From: Stylophora pistillata
Taxonomy: Eukaryota
Assembly (NCBI RefSeq): GCF_002571385.2
Contig: NW_019218323.1
Coordinates: 125,557-189,556, forward strand
Direction: 5' to 3'
DNA: 64,000 nucleotides
Shown: positions 2,461 through 64,000 of the stretch, in pieces
Position numbering within the stretch: position 1 is the first letter of the stretch
How the letters are laid out: each line of letters starts with the position of its first letter
Program-made: the position numbers and the translations under genes
Notes under the pieces: model-generated
What the model was told of the DNA's origin: nothing
The model's input: the letters and a program-made list of their open reading frames with translations, nothing else
Database searches by the model: none

Positions 2461-4820
2461 TCTTATAAAATTTAGATATAGAATATCTACACATACAGGC
2501 GGCTTTAATAAGTCTATCGTAGCCTTCTTCGTAAGAATTTGTTCTCTCCTACAGAACTGTAGTTGTACGCTCTCTACGTTATAAATAGGTATAAAATCTA
2601 CTATGCTATCGATACTACGAGAGAGATGACAATAATGATTTACTTAGCATATAATCTCGAACTTACATTGAACACACTTTTCCCTGAAAACGATCGTCAT
2701 AAAATGTTGTCGCGTCTAGAACTAGAGAATAACGTGACAGACTTCCCAACTCACTTCAATGGGATTCAGACGAGGTTTTGAGTGATGCTCATTTCGTAGC
2801 CAGTGATGTGTAATCCAAATAAAACTGCGAACTACTCGCAATACTATAAATTAACTCTTTCTCTACCATTTTGAAACATCATGGGCTAAAGGCTAGCAAC
2901 GACAGTAACAGAAATGCGGCTTTTATCTCATCTTTCCAGATATGCGTTCCTTACGAGTATTTACAAAGACTAGATCATATCTTGATATACATTATTTATA
3001 GGTATATAAATACATGTTCACTTTATGTACAGCAAGACAAAAACGCCACCAACCAGACCGCAACTATGCCTAAGAGCTTCTTTTTAAAAGTGAAAGTCGA
3101 ACGGGGGGATAGACAATTGCACAGAAACCGTCCACAGTCTTCGCCCAAAGTTCTCTTTCCAAGATTTTTTCAGTCACGTTTCATTTCATCTCTGAACTAC
3201 GAAATGGCTAACTGCACAACATGTAACCTGGAATCAGAATAAATTAAAGCACTCTTCCCGGAATAAAATGCTACCGTATAATCCGAAACAAGTTTCTCAA
3301 GGAAAAAGAAAAATGTGATTGAAACAGAATGTCGAGTTCTAGCCCTTTCAACAGAAAAATAATATATATATATATGAACCTAAAAGGAATATTAAGAAAA
3401 AGAAAGAAGATAAAAAAAAAATCCACTTTTTTGTGAAAGAGGAGTCACCACTGTTCAATACTACAAGACAGAACCGGTTTGTAACAAAACAAATGTGTAA
3501 CCTGTATATTAATGTTAATGCAGTCGAACATGACAACAGAAAAAGAGAAATTGGATGGTTGAGGCGTTTGATGAAAGTAGGATTTGAATAAGTATACAAA
3601 AGTTCGAGAAATTGTACTAACTGCGACACAGTAAAGACGCTTCGCAAAACAATGCCTTTGCTTGAATTCAGCGAGTCATCAAGAGTCAAGTCCTACTTAT
3701 GAGTGTGAAAGCATGAAAGTGAAGAAATGAGAAGTACATACTGTTACTGTACCTCCTAATAATAAAAAGAAATTTAAAAAATAGTAAAATATTTCATGCT
3801 TGACTGATGTGAATAAGAAAACCGAAAAGTTAAAAAAAAAAAAAATTATAAATAAAAGCTGAGATCCCAAGAAAGAAAGAGAAAAGACCGACTTAGGTTA
3901 CGTTATTCCACGGAGGAATGTTCTGCACAGGAGATTATGAAACAAGTATCATGCGTAGCCCTTTCTTAATAACTATATACCTAAACGCTATTATTACCAC
4001 GATAAATCTCATTAACGCATTACTAAATTTTGTTCTAATACTCCTTTCATGGCTCTACCTACATGCAACTAAAATCTATAAATCCCTCTAATTAAAACGA
4101 AAAAGAATACTACTACTTCAGTTCTATGCTTGTAGAGTGTGAGGGTACGTGCCCCCTTTTATTTATTTATGCATATATTATAGCATTTACCGAACTAATT
4201 CCAAATGTTGGAATGATTAATAATTCTCTTTGTCTTTCACCTGCACCTGAGGATTGCAAGGCGTAATGTAGAGTACTTTGTGTAACTCACAACGGAAATA
4301 GTTCCTCTTTCTAGTACTCTGTTTAATAAAATTTGCAGCTTGAGTTTGACCCAAAATCACAGCTTCCTTATCACTATAACTACACCACCACAATAATATG
4401 GCTTTCAATACATAACCTGTAAAAAAAATCACAAATCGCCAAGATCTTCAGGATAAAAACTGCCGTAACTAAGAAATTTTCCCTTGCTCTTTATATCAGA
4501 TTAAAGTAGGAAACGAAACCGAATTGATGGATAAGAAAAAAAGAGTTACTCACAAAAGTATGAAAATTGAAAAGAACTTACACACAAAAGTAAGGACAAA
4601 ACTTCACTAGAAAAACTGAAGAAAAGATTCCAAGTAGTAACGTATCGTAATGGTTAACTAAGTAAACTTGAGAATATTTGTACTATACAAAACAAAAACG
4701 TAAAGGTCTTGCAACCTACCCCCTTCAGTACAAATTACTCGTTCTACTTTCAAGTACAGCAAACTAAAAAATTTCTAGCATGGCTCTTTCCTATTGACCA
4801 AAAAGATCACCATCACAAAG

Positions 4821-18639
<13,819 letters not shown>

Positions 18640-46045: not shown

Positions 46046-46605
46046 CTTCTAGAGCAGAGACAAAGGTTAGCTATCATTGTTCTCGTTGCTCATTTAAATA
46101 TCACGCTATTTTTTGTTGCATGGCATGTAGGAGTAATCATAGGCGAATCGGTATAAGAACTTCGTGTACTCTCGCATATTGAGTAATGACTATTTTTTTT
46201 CGAATTTTCTCCATGTCTAGTATTGCTTCATAGTAATTACAAGTCGTGATGTACCGTCCTGAGTTTCAATTCGTTCTTGATCTTGTGGAAGCTGCCCTTG
46301 CTGAACGCCAGTTCTTGAAGCTCGTTGATGATTATCCAAACTTATATGTTGGTCCTCACGTTAAAAACGCAATCAGAAGGTGTGCTCTGTTCCTTTCATG
46401 GACACTACTAAACAAGGAATTCTCGAGAGAAGACCAATGGAATACAGTCAGTATGTTTAGTAGTGAAATCTACTGCTTTGTTATTTTCTGAGTCCAGAAC
46501 TAAAAGCCAACGACGAGCTTTGCTCAAGAACGTAATTTCGACGTGGGAGGCGTGAAATGACTTAAAGGCTCGTCATTATAAAGCGAGAGAGCTTAGTTAT
46601 CAAGT

Positions 46606-46632
46606 GAGAGAGAGAGAGAGAGAGAGAGAGAG
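46606..46632. repeat. (GA)n microsatellite
   Basis: Direct observation. Confidence 0.95.
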
Positions 46633-46966
46633 GTGGTTGGCTTCGGTTAATCCAATGAAATAACAGTACAAAGGTACAGGTGTACTCGACTGTCAATGCA
46701 ACAAGGGGGTGTCTTTCATTTCTTTACACTAAGGCCTTTCTTATGTATTACTTCGCGACGGAAATACTTCCTATTGGCTTGACTAGTTCGATGTTAACAA
46801 GAGCTTTTGGCCCGATGATTTTTTGTTTGGAGCTGCATCATGACGCGTAATAGATGTCGCTGCTACGAAAGATTCCTCTAGCCCATGATGTCTGAATTTT
46901 GTATGCCATCGAAACAAAAAGAAAAAGAAATACATTTATGATAGTTAGATGGAAGTTCTATGAAAC

Positions 46967-47190
46967 CTCTTTCTCTTCTGGTTAGTCAGTCCTATGTGGG
47001 CTGTTCTCATCTGAAGGCAGATCCTTTCATTCATTTTTCCCTCTTCTTTCTCTCTTAAGTAGCCAGTCCTTGTCTGAAGGACTTCTCTATTTTTTGCTTT
47101 TTTTTTAAAGGGGTTCTCTCTCTCTTGGGTAGTCAGTCCTATTTGGGCTGTTTTTATCTGAAGACAGAACTTTTAAGATTTTTTTTTTTC
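46967..47190. repeat. Diverged tandem repeat (~3 units of ~75 bp)
   Basis: Recurring CTCTCTT..GTAGTCAGTCCT...TCTGAAG at ~46970, ~47050 and ~47120. Confidence 0.6.
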
Positions 47191-48289
47191 TTCTGGTTCT
47201 CTCGGGTCTCTCGGCGCGTGTTTTAGATGCTTGGAAATACACAAAATCTGAATCACCGAAATCATGATGCTAATAGTTCCATCCACACTACCACCCCCCC
47301 CCCCATTTGCATTATAACTTTCTTTGAACTAAACCCTCGCTTCTAGTGACTGAATGTCGTTGAGTCCGATATTCGACGTCAGTCCGTTATTCGACTGAGT
47401 TGCTGTTTTCCTCCGTCGCAGTCATGAACCACGTCGGTGATGTTGTGAGCATGGCACACCTTCTTCGCGAAAATTTGCTTCCGACGAAGGAGCAAGTTAA
47501 CAATTTCCCTCTTTGTTGTACTTGGGACGAGTTTGGAGGAGAAAGAGCAATGCTAATAACAGGGTGCAAAGACTCGTTGTCCGGAGCACATGAGAAGAAA
47601 AAAGTACAAAAATGAGAAGAAACCTTCTATATAAATCTCTGTGAAAAAGAGATAATCCAAGCCAACCTTCAGACTGGAGTTATCTCTTTTCCATCAACTG
47701 TAAGCGCTGTATCAGAAAGCATCGCTCTTGGATTCTCTCAATCTGTAGCCGTTCTTCATCTTTTGTGTCAGCCTAACGCTCCGAAGGGAACGACCGTCCG
47801 ATACGTGATGCCATCAGCAATTGCGCCAAACCAGAGATGCTACTTTTACAATCCAGGAATAATTAAGGACGAAAAACTAAAACTTGTGGTTGCGGCAGGG
47901 TTTTAAGCAAGCACTATACCAACTAACTCATATGTGAAGTACGTTCTCGAAGGAGGTGCCTGTGTGTTGTGTTGTGGAGGATGCGGTGGTTGTGGAGGAT
48001 GTGGTGGTTGTGGAGGATGCTTGTGGGGATGTGGTGGCTGTGGTTGCCGGGGATGCGGCGGCTGTGGTTTGAGTTGGCTGTGGGGATTAAGGCTTAGTTA
48101 CTAACGATGGAAATATTAACATAATGTGTGTATGCGATCCTCATTATGCCAGATAAGTCGAGAAGGAACTTGGACTAGACTTAGATTTGTTCGTGTACAA
48201 AGTGTATAAGAACTCGCACCTGCAAGGCATTTAATGCCCTACCCTCTCTTTTACGAAAATAAGCAAAATAGCGAAATATTGTTGTAGGA

Positions 48290-53744: not shown

Positions 53745-54378
53745 AATTTTCTTTTTTTTTCCCTTCACTTACTGTTGTGAGACCAGATAATACCGATACA
53801 AGTGGAAATTTCTGCTAACTGTTCAGTACCGTTCAAGATCATGAGAGATCGATAATATTGTTACTTAAGCTACCGCTATTGTTTCAGTACGGTTACTACA
53901 TCAAAACTCTATCAAATTTTGTTGTGATATTCATGCTATGAAATAGAAGTGACGGTACAACAAGAGGAATCCGATCGATGTCATCGCAGAATCATTCATG
54001 ACGTACTGAAAAATGACTGCGAACCGAAGAAATATGTTTGAGTAAAACAATGGTCTTAGCTTCATGTTATTTTGCAAATAGCTAGATGTCGTTTGTATTT
54101 GTGGTTTAGATTAATTTTATTTCTTACCAGCGACGTGTATTGGAGCAAAGAAAAAAATAGGAGATATCCTTGCTTGCATTAAATGTCTTGCCGGATATCA
54201 CGCTGTTTTTTCTTACATTACAATAACTTCCTACTGAAATAATAGCAACGCAAGAGAAATAGCAGACAAATCGGAATAGGTACCTCGTGTAACCACATAT
54301 TTAGCAATGGCTTATTGATTCTTTAAGTTTTTTCCTCTTTTAATTTTCTCCCTGTTTAGAAATACCTCAAAGTAAGCC

Positions 54379-57300
54379 ATGACGTTCCGTCCCCCTGGGC
54401 TTCGATTCGGTATTGATTTAGTGGAAGCTGCTCTTGCCGAACGCCAGTTCCTACGGATCGTGGACGATTATCCAAGTTTATACGCCGGTCCTCACGTTCG
54501 AAATGCAATCAGAAGGTATGCTTTGTTCCTTTCATAGACCCTACTAAACAAGGAATTCTCGAGAAGAAGACTCACGTCAAAATGTTTTGTCATGAAATCT
54601 ACTGCTTTATTACTAACCCAGTCCAGACCTTAAAACCGGTTTCCTCGGTTTCTCGGCGAAAAAAAAACTGAATCACCGCATTTCTTCCCGACACTTGAGG
54701 GCTCAAGCATGATCTTAAGGTGTAGTTAGCGTTACGTTGAGTGCATTGAATGCACTCTTAGCCTAAATTGAACAACTTTTTTCGTTGAAGAAAGCTCTTC
54801 ATGGATTCATTACAAAATGCAAAATTGCCTTATTTCTTTCCTTTCCCTTCAGGTATGAACTTCTCTGGCTGCCTTTGCTTGCTCGGCATGCCACTTGTAC
54901 CAACAATTGGTCTAGTACTTTGAATGTCGCAGCACCACTTGACATCGCCTGGGTGTGGCATGTACACATGCTATCCCCCGTCGATTACCAGAGGGATTGC
55001 AATCAAATTGTCTCCACTCGCTTGGATCACAACATACTCATCGGAGAGCAACGTCAGAGAGGGCTTGTAAGGGCCAGGGCCTTATGGGAAGAGCTGTATC
55101 CTGAGGAACCTTTTGAGGTTGACCTGACGGCCCCTGTTAGCAACACGCCACATTTCGAATCAAGATTTGAGTATGACGTCGAAGCTGCTTGTGCTCGACA
55201 GCGGGTTTTTAATTATCAGGTGTCCTTACCTCACTATGCGGATAAGAAATTCTTGACGAAGGCGGTGGAGAGGTACAAATTACACCTTTATCTAAAGCAG
55301 CAAAATCCACAGACGTTTTTTGTACCGTGCTATGACTTCGACCTTATTTGGCACGCACATCAGGTTAATCCGGCAATCTACACAGAAGACACCACGAAAA
55401 TCCTGGGTAAATTATTCAATCACAATGATTCGGTGAACGACCGAAAGCCTGGTTCAAAACTTAGTAAGGCTGAAACAGTAACACGAGAGAAATGGGGAAA
55501 CCTGGGCCATCAATTTGCAGTTAATGGAGCTATGTTTCGCGGAGAGCCTCCTCTTTGTGCCACAACGCCGAAAGAATCCATTGATTACAGTTGTCATGCA
55601 GCATTTGAGTACACTGTGGACGTGACCACGTTGGAAGTTGAAGGTCTCCCAAAACCGAAAACGTACACCGTCAAAATTGATGTCGTCAATGGCCCGCGAG
55701 TGCTTAAGGTGCAAGTTCGTGGACCTACTGCAAGACTTACAAAGTCTAATGGTGTGTTAGCAAGGTTTACATATAAAAAGAAGAAAAGAGAGATTTTGAG
55801 GGTGAGTTAAATTGTTCCATTTTTTTCTACTTTATGTTTTTTTTCACCAGGGCCTCAAACTAACGTATCAGTGAAGAAGTAAAATAAATGACACACCTAA
55901 AGGCTTTCTATGAACGACTGATGATAAAAGGTCGTAGCTTGTCACGAAGTCATTCTACATCACAAGTTTCCTCGGTTAGTAATCTTCCTGTTGCTAAAGC
56001 AATAGTTCTCAATATCCACTGGATTAACGTTTTTTAAGTTGAACACAAGACGGGCGCTAAAAACCTGAGAAAATAGTCGAGATCTGGTTATCACCGAACC
56101 TTAAATCACAGTCACATAGTGAATAGGCATGTGTTTCTGGTTTAATCCGTTAGGTTCGTATTAAGCAACATGGAACTTGCTCTTGCTTTACACATTTAAT
56201 GGACGAGTCTGCCGAGTGTTCCGAAGATTTGATTGGGGAAGTAGCGTCGTACATCAACCGGAAACGCACGAGATTTGGCTGGGAAAGTAACGTGGTGCCA
56301 CAACCAGAAACGCACGAGTTAACTGTCGCTGAAAACCTGATTGTTCGGTTTACTACTGTGGTCCAATCCCATCGGCCAGATGAATACGAATTTACTGTGT
56401 TGCCAAAGGAGGACTTCACTCCAGTCCGAGAAGCTGCCTCGATTTTGAGCTCACCAGCACTGTTCCTTTCGCCTTTTTCTTTGAACCAAACCCTCGCTTC
56501 TAGTGAAATGTCTTTGCATCCGATATCCGACTTTTGGGGACAAGAAGCGTTTACCTGCCGGGTGATGCACTCCGCCGAGTTGTTGTTCTCCTCCGTAGAG
56601 GTCATTAACCCTGTCGGCGATGTTGTGAGCACCGCGCACCTTCTACGCGGAAATGTCCTTCCGACTAAGGAGCAAGTCGACCAGCCCCATGACTTGTGTT
56701 GCACTTTGGATGAAGCAGCAGGAGAAAGAGCAATGCTCATTAGAGGGAGCAAAGACTGGGGCATCTGTATTGGCAAATGGAAAGGAGTTGTAAAGGGTCT
56801 CCCTGGCATACCTGGAATAGCACCGTCTGAACGCAGTCCAGGCGTTAAAGGAAAGCCTGGCGTGAAGGGCCAACCAGGTTATTTGAACATCGAGTTCTTC
56901 TCGGTGTCCGGAGCACAAGAGTGGAAAGTTGTACAGAACCATGGAGAAAACTTCAAGGTGCCTTTAAGCGAAAAAGAGATAGTCTACGTAAACCTTCGAA
57001 CTGGAGTGATCTCTTTTCCATCCGAGGTAACTGCCGTCCCAGAAAGCATTGCACTGGGGTTCTCTATAGCTGTCCTTCATCTTCTGTGTCAGCCTAACCC
57101 TTCGAGCGGTGTTACCGACTACACGAGGCCATCAGCCATGGTTTCAAGCCAGAAAGACAAACCTCGTAGAATCTGTTGTGAAGAGCTAATGCTGGTAGTA
57201 GCCGCAGGGTTCTATGGCACCACTGTGCCCAGCAACGCATATATTAAGCACCAACTTGGAGGTGCCTGTGGTGGCTGTGGTGGTTGCGGAGGTTGTGGAG

Positions 57301-57509
57301 GCTGTGGAGGTTGTGGAGGATGTGCAAGTGGTGGAGGATGCGGTAGCTGCGGTGGATGTGGTGGGTGTGGGTCATGCGATGGCTGTGGAGGTTTCGGAGG
57401 ATGTGCAATTAGTGGAGGATGCGCAATTGGTGGTGGATGCGGTAGCGGCGGTGGATCTGGTGGGTGTGGGTCATGCGGTGGCTGTGGTTGTGGCGGCTGT
57501 GGGGACTAA
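54379..57509 (+). CDS. Glycine-rich domain-containing protein (GRDP1/2-like, DUF1399), copy 2, intact, ~813 aa
   Basis: Exons 54379-54515, 54853-55801 and 56154-57509 (GT-AG, phases 2 and 0; 2442 nt). IDLVEAA...[59 protein letters not shown] and GAMFRGEPP match the plant GRDP family. C-terminal Cys/Gly repeat. Confidence 0.92.
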
Positions 57510-59451
57510 GGCTTGTTTACTTACTAAATAATGATGAACTAAAAGGCTGTGGAACTGAGGAACTTGAAAATAATACGTATAAGTACTCGAAAATAAGCCT
57601 GCCCTTGCGGACAACTGACAAAATTGTCTTCTGATATGATTGATGAAGGTGACATCCTGCGTGAACCGACTCTAGTGCGTTTGTGCATAGTCCTGAGTAA
57701 TTATTTTTAACCTATGCGCATTCATTTCGAATAGGACTGTCCGAATTATAATGGTGGAACTAAGCCGTTTTTTGGTAAAACTTTGGAAGTGTTTCAAGGA
57801 TACTCTTCAATTAGGTATACAAGTTTGTAAGATTGAAAACTTATGCGACCATACCGATGTACATTTTCAAATTGGTGATTCGCAGTCTTTTGTTCCCAAG
57901 TTTGAAATGTTTCTTTTAATTCGATAGAAAGTTATCCTCTTGACACCAGAGGTAAGAAATACTATGTAGTTACATGAAATGCGATTTGAATCTCGATTTT
58001 ATGGTAAAAGTAGAGAGCACGCACCTATGTAAATTTATAGTTGGTAGTTGAAATTATGATAACTTGTGGGTTAATCAGGAGTCATGATTTATATAGATAG
58101 AACAAACACAATGAAATTTCTCTTGCTTGCTATCTACGTACGATTCAAGGTGATGCATGTAATTTTGCTATTGTTACTTTAGGAAGTTATAACAGTAGAT
58201 GAATGTTTTTGAAGTTGTCGCTGAAAATTAACCAAGGAACACTGAAGTTGTTCAGCCAAGTTTTATGCGGAAAACGATTTGTTTTGGCCACGTTTTTTTA
58301 CGTGCATAGCACGATTCTTGCTTATTTTTCTAGGAAAGTAATTCTGGTGATTGCCTTACATGGATTGATATTCATGTAAGCGAAGTACTCTCTCGGAAGG
58401 ATAAGGCTATTTCAAAGTGGTTCCTGGACTCATTGAAGAAAATTTTCAGTTTAAAAAAAAAACTTTCATCCGTTGTTGTTTTAAGATTATTGTGGAAAAA
58501 TTGAGCGAAACAAGATATCGTTATTTCACTTTTCCGTAGTCATGCATAGCATTGGCGGATATCGAGGGGTCATCATTAGCCCCAGAAGACAGTCACGTCA
58601 AAGTTAACTATCAAAAAGCTAGATTTCGTTTTTGGAAAAGAAAAAAAAAAGGGAAAATAGGCATAAATTTCTGTAGAAACACGATGATTTTCCCCTTTCC
58701 TTGAGCCTTGGAAAATTGTATCAATCGAATCAGTTGTTACCTCTGCTAATTGTTGAAATCAGAGTTGAGATCATGAGTCCACTGGTTAGATACTCTTCTA
58801 ACAAAACTGATAACGGCGATTTTCCATTTACAATTTGTTCTTTAGTCTTCTGGTTCTTCGCCAACCGTGGGCTCTCTTACGTCCTTAATTAATCTTGGGT
58901 TCTACACCAATCTCGTTGGAAATTTGGGGGTTAACTAGCTCGAACACCGTGGGCAAGCGAGAAGTACTGGGAGTCTTCTCAGGAACTTTGTTTTTTCTAT
59001 CTGGGACTCTTTCTCTCCTCTAACTCACTCAGCCCCAAGTACACGCTCTTTAATACCCTATTTGAAGGCATGTTTGAGCTCACGGGACAAATGACCTTGT
59101 TAGAGAAATCATATTTTTTTAGAATACAAACGAAAACATTTTCACAAGACGTTCGAAATGAACGAAAAAGTACTTAACACCAACAAATATTCGAGAACCA
59201 AAACCGAAACAAAACCTCCCGTTGAGGACTTTAGGAAATTTCAAGAAACAATGAAAAACACGAGTAACGATAACGATTATCGTACGAGAATTAAGCCCTG
59301 TTACATGTACAACGGTCAAAATAAATAACTGGTCTCGCAGCACACGACAAACTAAAGCTCACAAGACTCGTGTAATGATTCCAAGATAATCTAGAAGGCC
59401 TAAAAAATTCCCGAAAAATTAACCAGAACTTTCCTTTTTCTAATAATTCCC

Positions 59452-61992: not shown

Positions 61993-63879
61993 ATGTCACG
62001 CGGTAAGATAAAACTCAGCATCGATTTAGTGGAGGCAGCTGTAGCGCACCGTCAGTTCTTACAGCTCGTTGATGACCATCCAAGTTTATACTCTAGTCCA
62101 CTCGTTCAAAACGCAATCAGAAGGTTAGTTTAGTTCAACTGTACTGTTAATCACTCACTTGAAATGTTTAAGAGTATGGCCTTTGGAATCGAAACAAAAA
62201 GCCCACAGTTTCCCTTTTCACCCTTAGGTTTTGAATTACCGAGCAACAGCAGCATACAGAGAAACCGTACCGTAAACAACTGCCATAAAGTCTCGGAAAC
62301 TATTCCCTTTACGACACACTGAAAGTTTATTGGCTACGAGGCATGTTTAAGCGAAAGAACAGTAACATGTTCTTAAGTAATCAAAGAAAACTCACACGTC
62401 TCACACAAAGTAATGACTGATTCAAATACGTTTGTCTGCACGTCACGAAAACAATCTTATCGAAAAAGCAAGGGAACAATATTATTCAAATGCTGACCTT
62501 TTCGTTTATTTTTCACGTCCCGAATATAATTCATGGACTAGTATCATTTCTTTCCCGAAAGCTCAAATCATAAAAAATTCGGTGAATTTCAAGTTCGACG
62601 TGTCAGTAAGTCTGTTACAATGATGTAGGAGATGTAGAGTGCAATATCATCATCAGACATGGGGACTGATTTAGTGAGGTCCCCACTCTCACTAAGTTTT
62701 CATTTTCGAGTACCAAGCACTGAACTAAGTGAGGAGACTGAAAAGAAGGAGTAGAAAGTTAAAGTGTGGGCTCACTAAACAGCGAGAGAAAGAACAGAAT
62801 GAGAAAATCAACGATTTCAATCAATCTTGTCCGGAAATGTATCGTGCACCCATGGTATCCTCCCAACCATGGAGTCTTTACAGTCGGATTGCAAGGAAGC
62901 CTTTACTTGACTCTAAACTGATATCAACTATTTTTAACCTTGTTTTTCTTTTAGGTATGAGCTTTTCTGGCTGCCTTTGCTCGCTCAATCCACCACCTCA
63001 GAAATTGCGGCACCACTCGACATCGCATGGGTTTGGCACGTGCACATGCTGTCACCTGTCAATTATGAAAGGGACTGCAACGAAATTGTCTCTATACTAC
63101 TAGATCACAAGATACTAAGCGGAGAGCAGCGTCACAAAGGGCTTGTTAAGGCCAAAGCTCTATGGGAAAAGTTGTATCCTGGCGAACCTTTTGAAGTTGA
63201 CCTGACGGCCGCTGCTAACAATGCGCAAGATTTCAAGTCAAGAATTGAGTACGACATCGCAGCTGCTTGCGCTCGACAGAGAGTCTTTTATTATCAGGTG
63301 TCCTTACCTCACTATGAAGATAAGAAATTTTTGACTGAAGCAATGGAGAGGTATAAATTTCATCTCATGCTCAAGCGAGATAATCCAGGCACGTTTCTTG
63401 TGCCTTGCTATGACTTTGACCTCATTTGGCATGCGCATCAAGTAAATCCACTACTGTATAAAAAGGACACCACGGAAATACTGGGAAAAGTACTTAAACA
63501 TGATGACTCGGTGAACGACCGACAGCCTGGCTCAAAGCTCAACATGTCTGAAGAAACAACACGTGAAAAATGGAAAAACCTGGGCCAAGAATTTGCAATG
63601 AATGGAGCCATGTTCCGCGGAGAGCCTCCACTTGGAACTAACACATTAACAGGGCCCATTGACTACACTTGGCTGGCAGCGCTCGAGTACACTGTAGATT
63701 TGACCAAATTCGAAGTTGAAGGTCTCCCTAAACCAAAAGCCTACACCGTTAAAATCGAAGTCGTGAATGGTGAGCGGGTCCTAAAGAAACAGGTTCGCGG
63801 GCCAAACGCGACACTTCTGGAATCCAACCGTGCTTTATCAACGTTTACATTTAAAACGAAAAATAGCAGTAATCTCAAG
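61993..63879 (+). CDS. GRDP-like (DUF1399) protein, copy 3; exons 1-2 only, continues beyond the window
   Basis: Exon 1 at 61993-62123 (MSRGKIKLSIDLVEAAVAHRQFLQLVDDHPSLYSSPLVQNAIR) and exon 2 at 62955-63879 (YELFWLPLLA...[15 protein letters not shown]...NLK|GTAAGA). Same intron positions and phases as copy 2. Confidence 0.92.
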
Positions 63880-64000
63880 GTAAGAGTCTTAATGCAATAA
63901 TTATTTCTCTTCTACGAGTCAGAGTTATATATCGGTTGTCTCCTTTTCATTTGATCTGTATTCTTAAGATACGCTCCTTAGAATTCCTCTTCTCTCACCC

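What the first reader, a model, noticed from the sequence alone, without database searches (positions are those of the whole stretch)
54379..57509. GRDP/DUF1399 protein with twin WHxH motifs fused to a 21-Cys (CGG)n tail: possible metalloenzyme plus metal-sink or self-substrate module
Seen in the sequence: an internally duplicated motif, [17 protein letters not shown]...LDH (~54935-55030) and [18 protein letters not shown]...NHND (~55325-55430), whose D-x4-WHxH cores are identical in copy 3. It is followed by a beta-rich middle region and an ~80-aa Gly/Cys tail. Known: Arabidopsis GRDP1/2 are linked to stress responses, and I know of no defined biochemistry for them. Bacterial TIGR04222 proteins end in similar Cys/Gly tails that have been likened to RiPP precursors. 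BURP and DUF3328 proteins are His-motif copper enzymes that modify peptides. Inference: the paired D/WHxH/H motifs could form a metal centre, and the tail could be a metal or redox buffer, an acylation anchor, or a cis substrate. This would be an uncharacterised stress system in an animal.
Basis: partly seen in the sequence, partly recalled or inferred. Interest (0 to 1): 0.75.

Follow-up and report, generated by a model that had tools for sequence, protein, structure and literature searches.

The report
Coral GRDP gene with cysteine-glycine tail
This is a real, expressed coral gene of the widespread but biochemically unexplained GRDP (DUF1399) family, and its cysteine-glycine tail is a family hallmark, not a special fusion.

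Summary
Window 54379-57509 (+) is a three-exon gene (54379-54515, 54853-55801, 56154-57509; 813 codons). Both introns are confirmed by poly(A) RNA contigs from four runs. Exon 2 matches Pfam PF07173 GRDP-like (E 4.5e-39). The two D-x4-WHxH blocks are a true internal duplication (hhalign E 2.6e-15). The tail is 83 residues with 21 Cys and 46 Gly.

The architecture is not special to this gene. Full-length relatives in corals, anemones, amphioxus, molluscs and annelids share it. Plant GRDP2 is described with a Gly-rich, Cys-interspersed C-terminus (PMC4299439).

New here:
- The "beta-rich middle" is a Tubby-like 12-strand barrel around a buried hydrophobic helix. The top five PDB matches are all Tubby or LURP-one-related, Z 9.7-10.6, and the next is 6.2.
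- The helical GRDP-like domain has no solved look-alike.
- Six conserved residues (R115, D163, H190, D191, D192, R197) are lost mainly in relatives with Cys-poor tails. This is suggestive only.

A metal centre, tail chemistry and a stress role remain untested. The scan noted the surrounding tandem cluster on this same window (s1-791978). Exons were searched and folded separately and never joined.

The parts
54379..54515 (+). Coding exon 1: ATG plus 45 2/3 codons for the conserved N-terminal helix ([35 protein letters not shown])
   Evidence: ORF and sequence. An in-frame TAA lies at 54373-75. Donor GT is at 54516. RNA contigs join 54515 to 54853. Homologues start the same way.
54516..54852 (+). 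Intron 1 (337 nt, GT..AG)
   Evidence: Joint 'skips 337, GT..AG (cut +2)' in contigs of all 4 runs laid.
54853..55801 (+). Coding exon 2: helical GRDP-like (PF07173) domain (exon-2 residues 1-~235) and the start of a small beta-sandwich (residues ~247-316)
   Evidence: Pfam E 4.5e-39. AF2 model mean pLDDT 88.7 with helices to residue 216 and strands 252-308. 2486 representative clusters at E<=1e-3.
54935..55033 (+). Repeat 1 motif P-x-D-x4-W-H-x-H ... Y..DC ... DH (WHVH at 54956-54967)
   Evidence: Counts in alignment A1: D30 92/92, H36 82/92, H38 93/93, Y45 94/95, D48 95/95, H59 90/95.
55325..55444 (+). Repeat 2 motif P-C-Y-D-x-D-x2-W-H-x-H ... Y..D ... H-N-D-S-V-N-D-R (WHAH at 55349-55360)
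   Evidence: Counts in A1: D161 91/95, D163 95/95, H167 94/95, H169 95/95, Y176 95/95, H190 93/94, D192 95/95, R197 92/95. Position 191 is N here, where 87/94 have D.
55802..56153 (+). Intron 2 (352 nt, GT..AG, phase 0)
   Evidence: Joint 'skips 352, GT..AG (cut +1)' in contigs of all 4 runs laid.
56154..57509 (+). Coding exon 3 (451 codons plus TAA): rest of the beta-sandwich, Tubby-like barrel, two short helices, Gly/Cys tail
56373..57089 (+). Tubby-like closed beta-barrel (exon-3 residues 74-312) wrapped round the hydrophobic helix 295-312
   Evidence: VIA-align: 1zxu Z 10.6 (137 of 162 residues aligned), 1i7e 10.4, 3c5n 10.2, 1c8z 10.1, 2fim 9.7, next 6.2. Same top two among 48,161 chains. 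pLDDT is mostly above 90.
56796..56885 (+). Collagen-like G-x-P-G stretch (GLPGIPGIA ... [13 protein letters not shown]) inside the barrel region, modelled as two strands bridged at every third residue
   Evidence: DSSP pattern E--E--E--E twice, pLDDT 92-96. Conserved as G.PG...G.PG.PG.L in relatives. 3 of 50 relatives hit Pfam Collagen.
57036..57089 (+). Hydrophobic helix [18 protein letters not shown]: the core helix of the barrel, not a membrane span
   Evidence: Highest hydropathy of exon 3. Helix 295-312 has pLDDT 95-98 and lies inside the aligned range of the Tubby-like matches. PMC2639001 makes the same argument for scramblases.
57189..57257 (+). Conserved post-barrel helices ([24 protein letters not shown]) leading into the tail
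   Evidence: Helices 346-353 and 361-368, pLDDT 83-96. The 'AAGYY..VPTN.Y' motif is conserved.
57258..57506 (+). Disordered (CGG)n-type tail: 83 aa with 21 Cys, encoded by tandem DNA repeats
   Evidence: Composition. pLDDT below 50 for residues 371-451. Repeat period 9 with 11.7 copies, plus an 81-99 bp higher order.

Best explanation
Shown:
- This is a transcribed, spliced three-exon gene of a stony coral. It encodes an 813-residue protein with no hydrophobic N-terminal signal.
- The protein belongs to the GRDP (DUF1399, PF07173) family.
- Its parts, in order, are:
  1. An all-helical GRDP-like domain made of two copies of one ancestral unit. It carries about 20 almost invariant polar residues and has no solved structural relative.
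  2. A small beta-sandwich.
  3. A Tubby-like 12-strand barrel closed round a hydrophobic helix.
  4. Two short helices.
  5. A disordered Gly/Cys tail that grows by DNA repeat expansion.

Inferred:
- The barrel-plus-tail half holds the protein at the cytosolic face of membranes. The tail cysteines would carry fatty acids (S-acylation), as in phospholipid scramblases, which share the barrel fold and are anchored by palmitoylated cysteines.
- The helical half is the working module. It is probably an enzyme, or a ligand-binding regulator, whose site is built from R115, D163, H190, D191, D192 and R197, with H36, H167 and Q116. These residues decay in relatives that have lost the tail cysteines, so the site and the cysteines appear to serve one function.

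Confidence by step:
- Gene and family: about 0.95.
- Tubby-like fold: about 0.85.
- Membrane tether by acylated tail: about 0.35.
For: Gene and family:
- Gene model and expression.
- Family: Pfam E 4.5e-39.
- 61 relatives of exon 3 and 212 of a full-length relative. Named ones come from corals, an anemone, amphioxus, molluscs and an annelid.
- Duplication. Conservation counts.

Tubby-like fold:
- five of five top rows are Tubby-like, with a gap from Z 9.7 to 6.2.
- A protein-language-model search puts Scramblase and LOR clusters among the nearest named ones (0.85 and 0.84, a lead only).
- Scramblase precedent: buried 'transmembrane' helix with palmitoylation as the anchor (PMC2639001, passages).
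- Cotton GhGRDP1 is cytoplasmic and co-localises with an ER marker (PMC13001069, passages).

Coupling of site and tail:
- In 68 full-length proteins, mismatches at 20 key sites against Cys count after the core helix give Spearman -0.72.
- Intact proteins (n=33) have a median of 11 Cys. Degenerate ones (n=35) have a median of 3.
- Six sites are kept in 25-27 of 27 Cys-rich proteins but only 16-24 of 40 Cys-poor ones. Eleven other sites are kept in 39-40 of 40.
- The third paralogue in this genome has 6 of 20 sites changed and no tail.
Against: - No experiment on any GRDP tail is known to me. My paper searches found none linking GRDP with palmitoylation or Tubby (listings only).
- The Tubby-like assignment is by predicted fold only. 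None of 50 relatives hits Pfam Tub, LOR or Scramblase among the 25 of 26 families shown, and the PDB profile search finds only Gly-linker noise.
- The site-tail association rests on few independent events. There are 6-7 independent pairs: same direction 3.1, opposite 0.1, no difference 2.8, sign test median p 0.25.
- Tails vary widely in relatives. Some are Gly/Asp-rich with one terminal Cys and some are absent. Plant DUF1399 proteins also exist without a tail.
- The scramblase palmitoylation motif lies elsewhere in that protein.
- This copy has N at the 87/94-conserved D191. In 3 of 4 RNA runs its start codon reads CTG.
Confidence: 0.5

Rival explanations
1. First reader's main reading. The His/Asp residues of the two repeats form a metal centre (a metalloenzyme). 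The (CGG)n tail acts as a metallothionein-like metal or redox buffer.
For: - Six His and six Asp are kept in 87-95 of about 95 relatives.
- Consecutive tail cysteines are spaced CxxC, a common thiolate-chelating spacing (sequence; chemistry recalled).
- 2 of 50 relatives' tails hit Pfam 'FeoB-associated Cys-rich membrane protein'.
- A wheat DUF1399 gene is listed as induced 3.36 (log2) in iron-starved roots, next to metal transporters (PMC6859736, one passage).
- The site-tail association fits this reading as well.
Against: - Both WHxH blocks are inside predicted helices (29-39 and 160-170), so the two His of one block face apart (inference).
- No structural match to any metalloprotein fold: 0 of 48,161 chains at Z>=5.
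- No Pfam metallothionein hit.
- Many relatives have tails with only 1-5 Cys.
- No metal data exist.
Confidence: 0.2
2. Non-enzymatic scaffold. The helical domain binds and tunes partner enzymes, as cotton GhGRDP1 does with UDP-rhamnose synthase. The tail is a fast-evolving low-complexity spacer whose cysteines are incidental to a GGY/TGY repeat.
For: - GhGRDP1 binds and activates GhRHM1 (PMC13001069, abstract and passages).
- The tail is encoded by tandem repeats of period 9 and 81-99 bp.
- Tail length and Cys content vary greatly, from 5-6 Cys in the nearest relatives to 24 here.
- The tail is predicted disordered.
Against: - About 20 invariant polar residues are many for a mere binding surface.
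- Cys-rich tails recur from cnidarians to molluscs and in plants.
- Cys loss goes with loss of six domain residues.
Confidence: 0.2
3. Self-substrate. The GRDP-like domain chemically modifies the cysteines of its own tail, a eukaryotic in-cis counterpart of MNIO enzymes acting on Cys-rich tails.
For: - The tail resembles those of TIGR04222 proteins, which are proposed MNIO substrates.
- A TIGR04222 protein was the weakest hit of the exon-3 search (E 1.7e-4).
- The site-tail association.
Against: - No similarity of the domain to MNIO, BURP or DUF3328.
- The TIGR04222 hit is explained by low complexity, and the TIGR04222 model itself does not match.
- DUF1399 proteins without tails exist.
- No modified GRDP tail has been reported in the papers I saw.
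Confidence: 0.07
4. This particular copy is on its way to becoming a pseudogene in a birth-and-death cluster, so its unusually long tail is unconstrained repeat growth.
For: - The start codon reads CTG in contigs of X1, X7 and X8, and there is no other ATG in exon 1.
- Ten nonsynonymous against eleven synonymous differences. One is H to L at a >=90% conserved His of the barrel, in X1.
- It has D191N.
- The upstream copy is already a remnant.
Against: - The 813-codon frame is open in the assembly, and no frameshift or stop was reported in any of the four RNA contigs (tables 3 and 4).
- Both introns are spliced correctly.
- 19 of 20 key residues are intact.
- X5 keeps ATG.
Confidence: 0.1

Closest known systems
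Plant GRDP1/GRDP2 (AtGRDP1 At2g22660, AtGRDP2 At4g37900, cotton GhGRDP1)
   Same: N-terminal DUF1399 domain (described as two DUF1399 domains in cotton), similar length (787 aa for AtGRDP2), and a C-terminal Gly-rich domain with interspersed Cys. Some mollusc relatives of this gene are already named 'glycine-rich domain-containing protein 2' in NCBI.
   Different: The plant tail consensus is [CG]GGGCGG[GC], whereas here it is mostly CGG. The plant 'RNP-1' motif was not looked for. I did not test whether plants have the Tubby-like barrel. This protein is from an animal, and there are no functional data for any animal member.
Tubby/TULP C-terminal domain and LURP-one-related (DUF567, At5g01750)
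   Same: Predicted closed 12-strand barrel round a central hydrophobic helix. Z 9.7-10.6, with 137-165 residues aligned.
   Different: No sequence-level match. There is a collagen-like insert. Phosphoinositide-binding residues were not examined. In this protein the barrel sits in the middle and is followed by a Cys/Gly tail.
Phospholipid scramblases (PLSCR1-5)
   Same: Same superfamily fold according to PMC2639001. They are cytosolic proteins with a buried 'transmembrane' helix, anchored by palmitoylated cysteines. They are among the nearest named clusters in the language-model search.
   Different: No Pfam Scramblase match. Neither the Ca-binding motif nor the CCCPCC-type motif was seen. The cysteines are in a C-terminal tail rather than within the domain.
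Bacterial TIGR04222 membrane proteins (putative MNIO substrates)
   Same: A hydrophobic helix followed by a Gly/Ser/Cys low-complexity tail ending in CGGCGG-type repeats (P0061; PMC12452194).
   Different: The TIGR04222 model does not match. There are no transmembrane segments, the context is eukaryotic and cytosolic, and no MNIO partner is linked to this gene.
Cysteine-string protein and metallothioneins (recalled, not tested)
   Same: Dense runs of cysteines, used as multiply acylated anchors or as metal-thiolate clusters.
   Different: There is no sequence relation. Here the Cys are spaced by Gly-Gly and attached to two large folded domains.

Membership tests
GRDP-like / DUF1399 (Pfam PF07173) | Match to the family model above its gathering score | tested here: met
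   134.8 bits against 22.7, E 4.5e-39, profile positions 2-143 of 143.
GRDP-like / DUF1399 (Pfam PF07173) | Twin WHxH-containing repeats with the conserved Asp, Tyr and His | tested here: met
   19 of 20 key residues match the consensus; the exception is D191N.
GRDP proper (plant GRDP1/2 sense) | C-terminal glycine-rich domain with interspersed cysteines | tested here: met
   83-aa tail with 46 Gly and 21 Cys. Family description in PMC4299439. The exact plant consensus [CG]GGGCGG[GC] is not reproduced; the unit here is CGG.
GRDP proper (plant GRDP1/2 sense) | Central RNP-1-like motif (KGSCFLPM in AtGRDP2) | not tested
   Not searched for.
Tubby-like superfamily (Tub, LOR/DUF567, Scramblase) | Closed 12-strand beta-barrel round a central C-terminal hydrophobic helix | tested here: met
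   Tested on the predicted structure only. The top five PDB matches are all of this superfamily, Z 9.7-10.6, and the next is 6.2. They rank 1 and 2 of 48,161 chains.
Tubby-like superfamily (Tub, LOR/DUF567, Scramblase) | Sequence match to PF01167, PF04525 or PF03803 | tested here: not met
   No Pfam family for exon 3 at E<=1. None among the 25 of 26 families shown for 50 relatives. There is only a weak language-model lead.
Tubby-like superfamily (Tub, LOR/DUF567, Scramblase) | Phosphoinositide-binding basic pocket (Tubby), or Ca-binding and palmitoylation motifs (scramblase) | not testable with these tools
   No coordinates or residue-level structural alignment were available.
TIGR04222 | Match to the NCBIfam model; multi-span membrane N-terminal domain | tested here: not met
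   0 NCBIfam families at E<=1 for exons 2 and 3. The only strongly hydrophobic stretch is the barrel's core helix.
TIGR04222 | Gene neighbourhood with an MNIO (PF05114) enzyme | tested here: not met
   The only PF05114 match in the assembly is on another contig of 5.9 kb, with bacterial-type neighbours.
BURP / DUF3328 copper-dependent peptide-modifying enzymes | Match to the family models | tested here: not met
   Pfam scan of all three exons at E<=1 lists only PF07173 and a chance Arnt_C hit.

The most novel reading that the evidence does not exclude
The GRDP-like domain is an enzyme of a fold not yet seen in solved structures. Its site (R115, D163, H190, D191, D192, R197 with H36 and H167) acts on, or through, the cysteines of the protein's own tail while a Tubby-like barrel holds the protein at a membrane. 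This would be a eukaryotic, single-chain counterpart of the bacterial enzyme-plus-Cys-rich-tail systems. It would yield a membrane-bound, chemically modified or metal-loaded poly-thiol. It would also explain why plants and invertebrates alike keep a Cys/Gly tail on DUF1399 proteins.
Probability: 0.08. Interest if true: 0.85.

Novelty: new member of a known kind. Interest (0 to 1): 0.4.

Why it matters
GRDP/DUF1399 proteins affect seed size, stress tolerance and cell death in plants, yet no biochemical activity is known. Animal members have not been studied at all.

This report does not make the coral gene special. It does give the family three concrete handles:
- A Tubby-like, scramblase-like barrel. 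This suggests reversible membrane tethering and explains a helix that looks like a membrane span.
- A helical domain with no solved relative, split into a structural tier and a likely functional tier of invariant residues.
- A hint that the functional tier and the tail cysteines are kept or lost together.

Each handle can be tested with ordinary mutants and acylation or metal assays.

Tried and rejected
Searches that led nowhere:
- Foldseek against the PDB for both models found nothing at E<=0.001 (best 0.29 and 0.013).
- Profile searches of PDB sequences gave 0 hits for A1 and only Gly-linker artefacts for A2.
- NCBIfam gave nothing.
- The language-model search of the helical domain, leaving out its own family, gave no usable hit.

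Prokaryote gene context:
- I scanned 185,579 species genomes with three peptide patterns. 27 stretches matched and only 1 was a relative. That one is a 3.9-kb metagenome-assembled contig with 42% identity to the animal protein, probably eukaryotic contamination. No operon evidence came from this.

Pfam PF27765.1:
- It is listed on many relatives but is absent from the local library. I could not learn what it covers.

Readings rejected:
- 'Transmembrane anchor' for [18 protein letters not shown]. It is the barrel's core helix.
- True collagen for the G-x-P-G stretch. It is about 30 residues, lies inside a cytosolic domain, and there is no signal peptide.

Not done:
- I did not test whether plant GRDP1/2 share the barrel. 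The third homologous-protein search went unused, because the listing limit of 120 rows would have been filled by animal hits.
- Supplementary files of the papers were not opened. Figures S1 and S2 of PMC4299439 (plant tail and motif alignments) may bear on the comparison.

Rows dropped and crude counts:
- For some searches, 237 of the 304 database proteins held were excluded. Reasons were: under 600 aa, more than 2 gaps at the key sites, no core-helix motif, or under 60 residues after it.
- The C446 paralogue failed the motif filter and is reported separately.
- One search's count (40 of 129 long proteins with a tail) used a crude threshold. It includes truncated and frame-shifted gene models.

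Paper searches:
- One search was badly framed: 12 of 1,558 papers listed, none on GRDP.
- Searches found 1 and 2 papers, unrelated by title. I did not read them.
Full report
WHAT IS THERE

The + strand between 54379 and 57509 holds three open stretches in frame with canonical splice sites:
- 54379-54515, with ATG preceded by an in-frame TAA at 54373-75 and a donor GT at 54516.
- 54853-55801, with acceptor AG at 54851-52 and donor GT at 55802.
- 56154-57509, with acceptor AG at 56152-53 and stop TAA.

Together they make 2442 nt, or 813 codons. All searches and folds used window:54379-54513, 54854-55801 and 56154-57506 separately.

EXPRESSION AND SPLICING

Of the 24 public runs listed, 20 hold the stretch or part of it, and 8 of these are on record as RNA. 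All are labelled as a coral or coral metagenome. I laid the contigs of four poly(A) RNA runs on 54200-57800. X7 and X8 gave identical tables and are probably one data set.

In all four, one long contig covers the three exons and skips exactly the two introns, with GT..AG at 54515|54853 and 55801|56154. It runs on at least 1.2 kb past 57800, which indicates a long 3' UTR. There were no indels in the coding part.

Of 21 coding differences, 11 are synonymous and 10 are not. Two deserve notice:
- 54379 A>C turns ATG into CTG in X1, X7 and X8, but not in X5.
- In X1, a His of the barrel that is kept in at least 90% of relatives becomes Leu.

THE HELICAL DOMAIN

Exon 2 matches Pfam PF07173 GRDP-like (E 4.5e-39, two stretches). 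A HMMER search of 1.84 billion representatives found 2486 clusters at E<=1e-3.

I aligned 94 of the best 150, choosing those of at most 560 residues, with exon 2 to make alignment A1.

They are a real duplication: a profile of residues 1-100 against one of residues 105-235 gives probability 98.5% and E 2.6e-15 over 66 columns.

Column counts in exon-2 numbering:

| Residue | Kept | Residue | Kept |
|---|---|---|---|
| D30 | 92/92 | D161 | 91/95 |
| H36 | 82/92 | D163 | 95/95 |
| H38 | 93/93 | H167 | 94/95 |
| Y45 | 94/95 | H169 | 95/95 |
| D48 | 95/95 | Y176 | 95/95 |
| H59 | 90/95 | H190 | 93/94 |
| R115 | 94/95 | D191 | 87/94 (N in this gene) |
| Q116 | 95/95 | D192 | 95/95 |
| H127 | 95/95 | R197 | 92/95 |
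| R140 | 95/95 | | |
| Y141 | 95/95 | | |

The AlphaFold2 model (mean pLDDT 88.7) is helical up to residue 216 and then turns into strands 252-308. Both WHxH blocks lie at the ends of helices 29-39 and 160-170. On a helix, residues i and i+2 face apart. A single WHxH is therefore unlikely to hold one ion, and any metal site would need residues from several helices. This is my inference.

No solved structure resembles the model:
- Foldseek best E is 0.29.
- VIA-align found 0 of 48,161 chains at Z>=5. The best, Z 3.5, concerns only the beta part, with weak C2- or Ig-like matches.
- The PDB sequence profile gave 0 hits.

Two caveats apply. The helical part was not searched as a separate model, and it lacks the exon-1 residues.

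THE MIDDLE DOMAIN

Exon 3 has no Pfam or NCBIfam match. It has 61 relatives at E<=1e-3. Full-length relatives share the following:
- PF07173 at the front.
- The same middle region.
- A hydrophobic 'VPE..ALG.S.A.L..LCQP' helix.
- An 'AAGYY..VPTN.Y' motif.
- A Gly/Cys end.

The model built on 50 sequences (mean pLDDT 77.6) is above 90 through most of residues 80-310 and below 50 for 371-451.

Foldseek found nothing. The Foldseek-independent search ranked mouse Tubby (1i7e, Z 10.4, 148 aligned) and At5g01750 (2q4m, Z 10.3, 137 of 162 aligned) first among 48,161 chains, with the next at 7.3. A second look gave 1zxu 10.6, 1i7e 10.4, 3c5n 10.2, 1c8z 10.1 and 2fim 9.7, followed by a drop to 6.2.

These are all the Tubby or LURP-one-related fold: a closed 12-strand barrel round a central C-terminal helix (PMC2639001, passages). 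The aligned range, 74-312, includes helix 295-312. That helix is therefore the core of the barrel and not a membrane span.

Independently, the language-model search placed Scramblase (0.85) and LOR (0.84) clusters among the nearest named ones. This is a lead only.

At the sequence level there is no link. I therefore claim the fold, not family membership.

A collagen-like G-x-P-G stretch (56796-56885) is modelled as two strands bridged at every third residue, and it is conserved.

THE TAIL

The tail spans 57258-57506. It is 83 residues with 21 Cys and 46 Gly. It is predicted disordered and is encoded by tandem repeats of period 9 (11.7 copies) with an 81-99 bp higher order.

It is a family trait:
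- AtGRDP2 is described with a C-terminal Gly-rich domain containing interspersed Cys, consensus [CG]GGGCGG[GC] (PMC4299439, passages).
- Relatives in Hydractinia, oysters, a lobster and a bryozoan end in CGG/GCGG runs.
- The downstream paralogue has an approximately 45-residue (CGG)n tail.

Tails vary. Many coral paralogues end in Gly/Asp runs with one terminal Cys, and some have none. This gene has the most cysteines after the core helix of the 68 proteins compared: 24, against 5-6 in its nearest relatives.

A LINK BETWEEN SITE AND TAIL

I took 67 database proteins that passed my filters, plus this gene, with domain and tail read from separate exons. Across these 68, the number of mismatches at 20 key sites falls with the Cys count after the helix:
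- Spearman -0.72.
- Median 11 Cys for the 33 proteins with at most 1 mismatch.
- Median 3 Cys for the 35 proteins with 2 or more.

The sites split into two tiers. Eleven sites are kept in 39-40 of 40 Cys-poor proteins and 26-27 of 27 Cys-rich ones: D30, H38, Y45, D48, H59, H127, R140, Y141, D161, H169 and Y176. Six sites are kept in 25-27 of 27 Cys-rich proteins but in far fewer Cys-poor ones:

| Site | Kept in Cys-poor proteins |
|---|---|
| R115 | 16/40 |
| D163 | 18/40 |
| H190 | 17/40 |
| D191 | 24/40 |
| D192 | 22/40 |
| R197 | 20/40 |

H36, H167 and Q116 behave in between.

Relatives share history, so I built a tree from the barrel region only. It shows 7 changes of 'degenerate' and 6-7 independent pairs. 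Cys-poverty goes the same way in 3.1 of them, the other way in 0.1, and does not differ in 2.8, with a sign test median p of 0.25. The direction is consistent, but the test is underpowered.

The third copy in this genome (C446, a single 678-codon frame) fits the pattern. Six of its 20 sites are changed and it has no tail.

WHAT IT MOST LIKELY DOES

Shown: the gene, its expression, its family, the duplication, the fold of the middle domain, and the disorder and repeat origin of the tail.

Inferred: the barrel and tail hold the protein at the cytosolic face of a membrane, with the tail cysteines S-acylated. Three points support this:
- Scramblases share the fold, have a buried 'transmembrane' helix, and are anchored by palmitoylated cysteines.
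- Cotton GhGRDP1 co-localises with an ER marker although it has no membrane span.
- A weak C2-like sandwich precedes the barrel.

The helical domain would be the working part. Its second-tier residues (three acidic, two Arg, one to three His) look like a catalytic or ligand site.

I put the tether reading at about 0.35, a metal-buffer tail at about 0.2, a pure scaffold at about 0.2, and a self-modifying tail at under 0.1.

COMPARISON WITH TIGR04222 AND MNIO

The tail likeness is real. P0061 ends in a hydrophobic helix followed by [21 protein letters not shown], and such proteins are proposed MNIO substrates. Against kinship:
- The TIGR04222 model does not match.
- The E 1.7e-4 hit is of low complexity.
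- The only MNIO gene in the assembly lies on an unrelated 5.9-kb contig with DUF2063 and DoxX neighbours, the layout described for bacterial bufferin clusters.

NOVELTY

Cnidarian GRDP-like genes have been counted before (PMC7642931, one table row), and animal members are in NCBI, some named GRDP2. The gene is therefore a new member of a known kind.

In the paper library I found no text linking GRDP with Tubby-like folds or palmitoylation (listings only). That library lacks most subscription journals, and domain databases may already show the barrel.

Noticed in passing
window 54379: The start codon is polymorphic. RNA contigs of X1, X7 and X8 read CTG, while X5 and the assembly read ATG. Exon 1 has no other ATG, and an in-frame TAA lies just upstream.
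   Followed up: partly
window 54361 (acceptor AG at 54359-60): Contigs of X1 and X5 carry 88 further letters 5' of 54361. These are found neither in the window nor in the whole assembly (up to 1-2 mismatches). X7 and X8 instead run on unspliced to 54299. The extra letters could be an unassembled 5' exon, a leader, or a contig artefact.
   Followed up: partly
window 56569: In X1 only, A>T changes a His kept in at least 90% of relatives (exon-3 residue 139, 'RVMHSA') to Leu.
   Followed up: no
window 46246-47948: An upstream copy is a remnant. It has an exon-1-like ORF (75% identity), no exon-2 match, and an exon-3-like piece (48% identity) cut by a stop.
   Followed up: partly
window 62008-64000 and L003 1-4091: The downstream paralogue is complete. 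Exon 2 is 69% and exon 3 is 58% identical, the WHVH and WHAH cores are identical, HDD is intact, and the (CGG)n tail is shorter, at about 45 residues. From L003 position 4714 on the sequence reads N and was left alone.
   Followed up: partly
L002 2424-4460 (-), G000 contig C446: A third GRDP copy of the genome has a single 678-codon frame without introns. It has WQTH and WKTH instead of WHxH, and HPE instead of HDD, and it has no Gly/Cys tail. A reverse-transcriptase-like ORF lies nearby (6089-6712), so it may be a retrocopy.
   Followed up: partly
L004 (G000 contig C2644, 5924 bases): A bufferin-type cluster (MNIO PF05114, DUF2063, DoxX) with broken frames lies beside a RING/Sina zinc-finger ORF at 2593-3735, at coral-like G+C (0.34-0.43). 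It could be a bacterial associate, a chimeric contig, or a decaying gene transfer.
   Followed up: partly
L001 1832-2680: A 3.9-kb contig filed under a Lentisphaeria metagenome-assembled genome encodes an animal-type GRDP domain (42% identity over residues 1-290). This is probably eukaryotic contamination of that bin.
   Followed up: no
window 56796-56885: A collagen-like G-x-P-G pair of strands sits inside a cytosolic barrel domain and is conserved from corals to crustaceans. Its DSSP pattern suggests a polyproline-II-type hairpin.
   Followed up: no
relatives P0039, P0048, P0066 and others: Many relatives carry a precomputed label, Pfam PF27765.1. It is missing from the local Pfam copy, so its extent and meaning are unknown to me.
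   Followed up: partly
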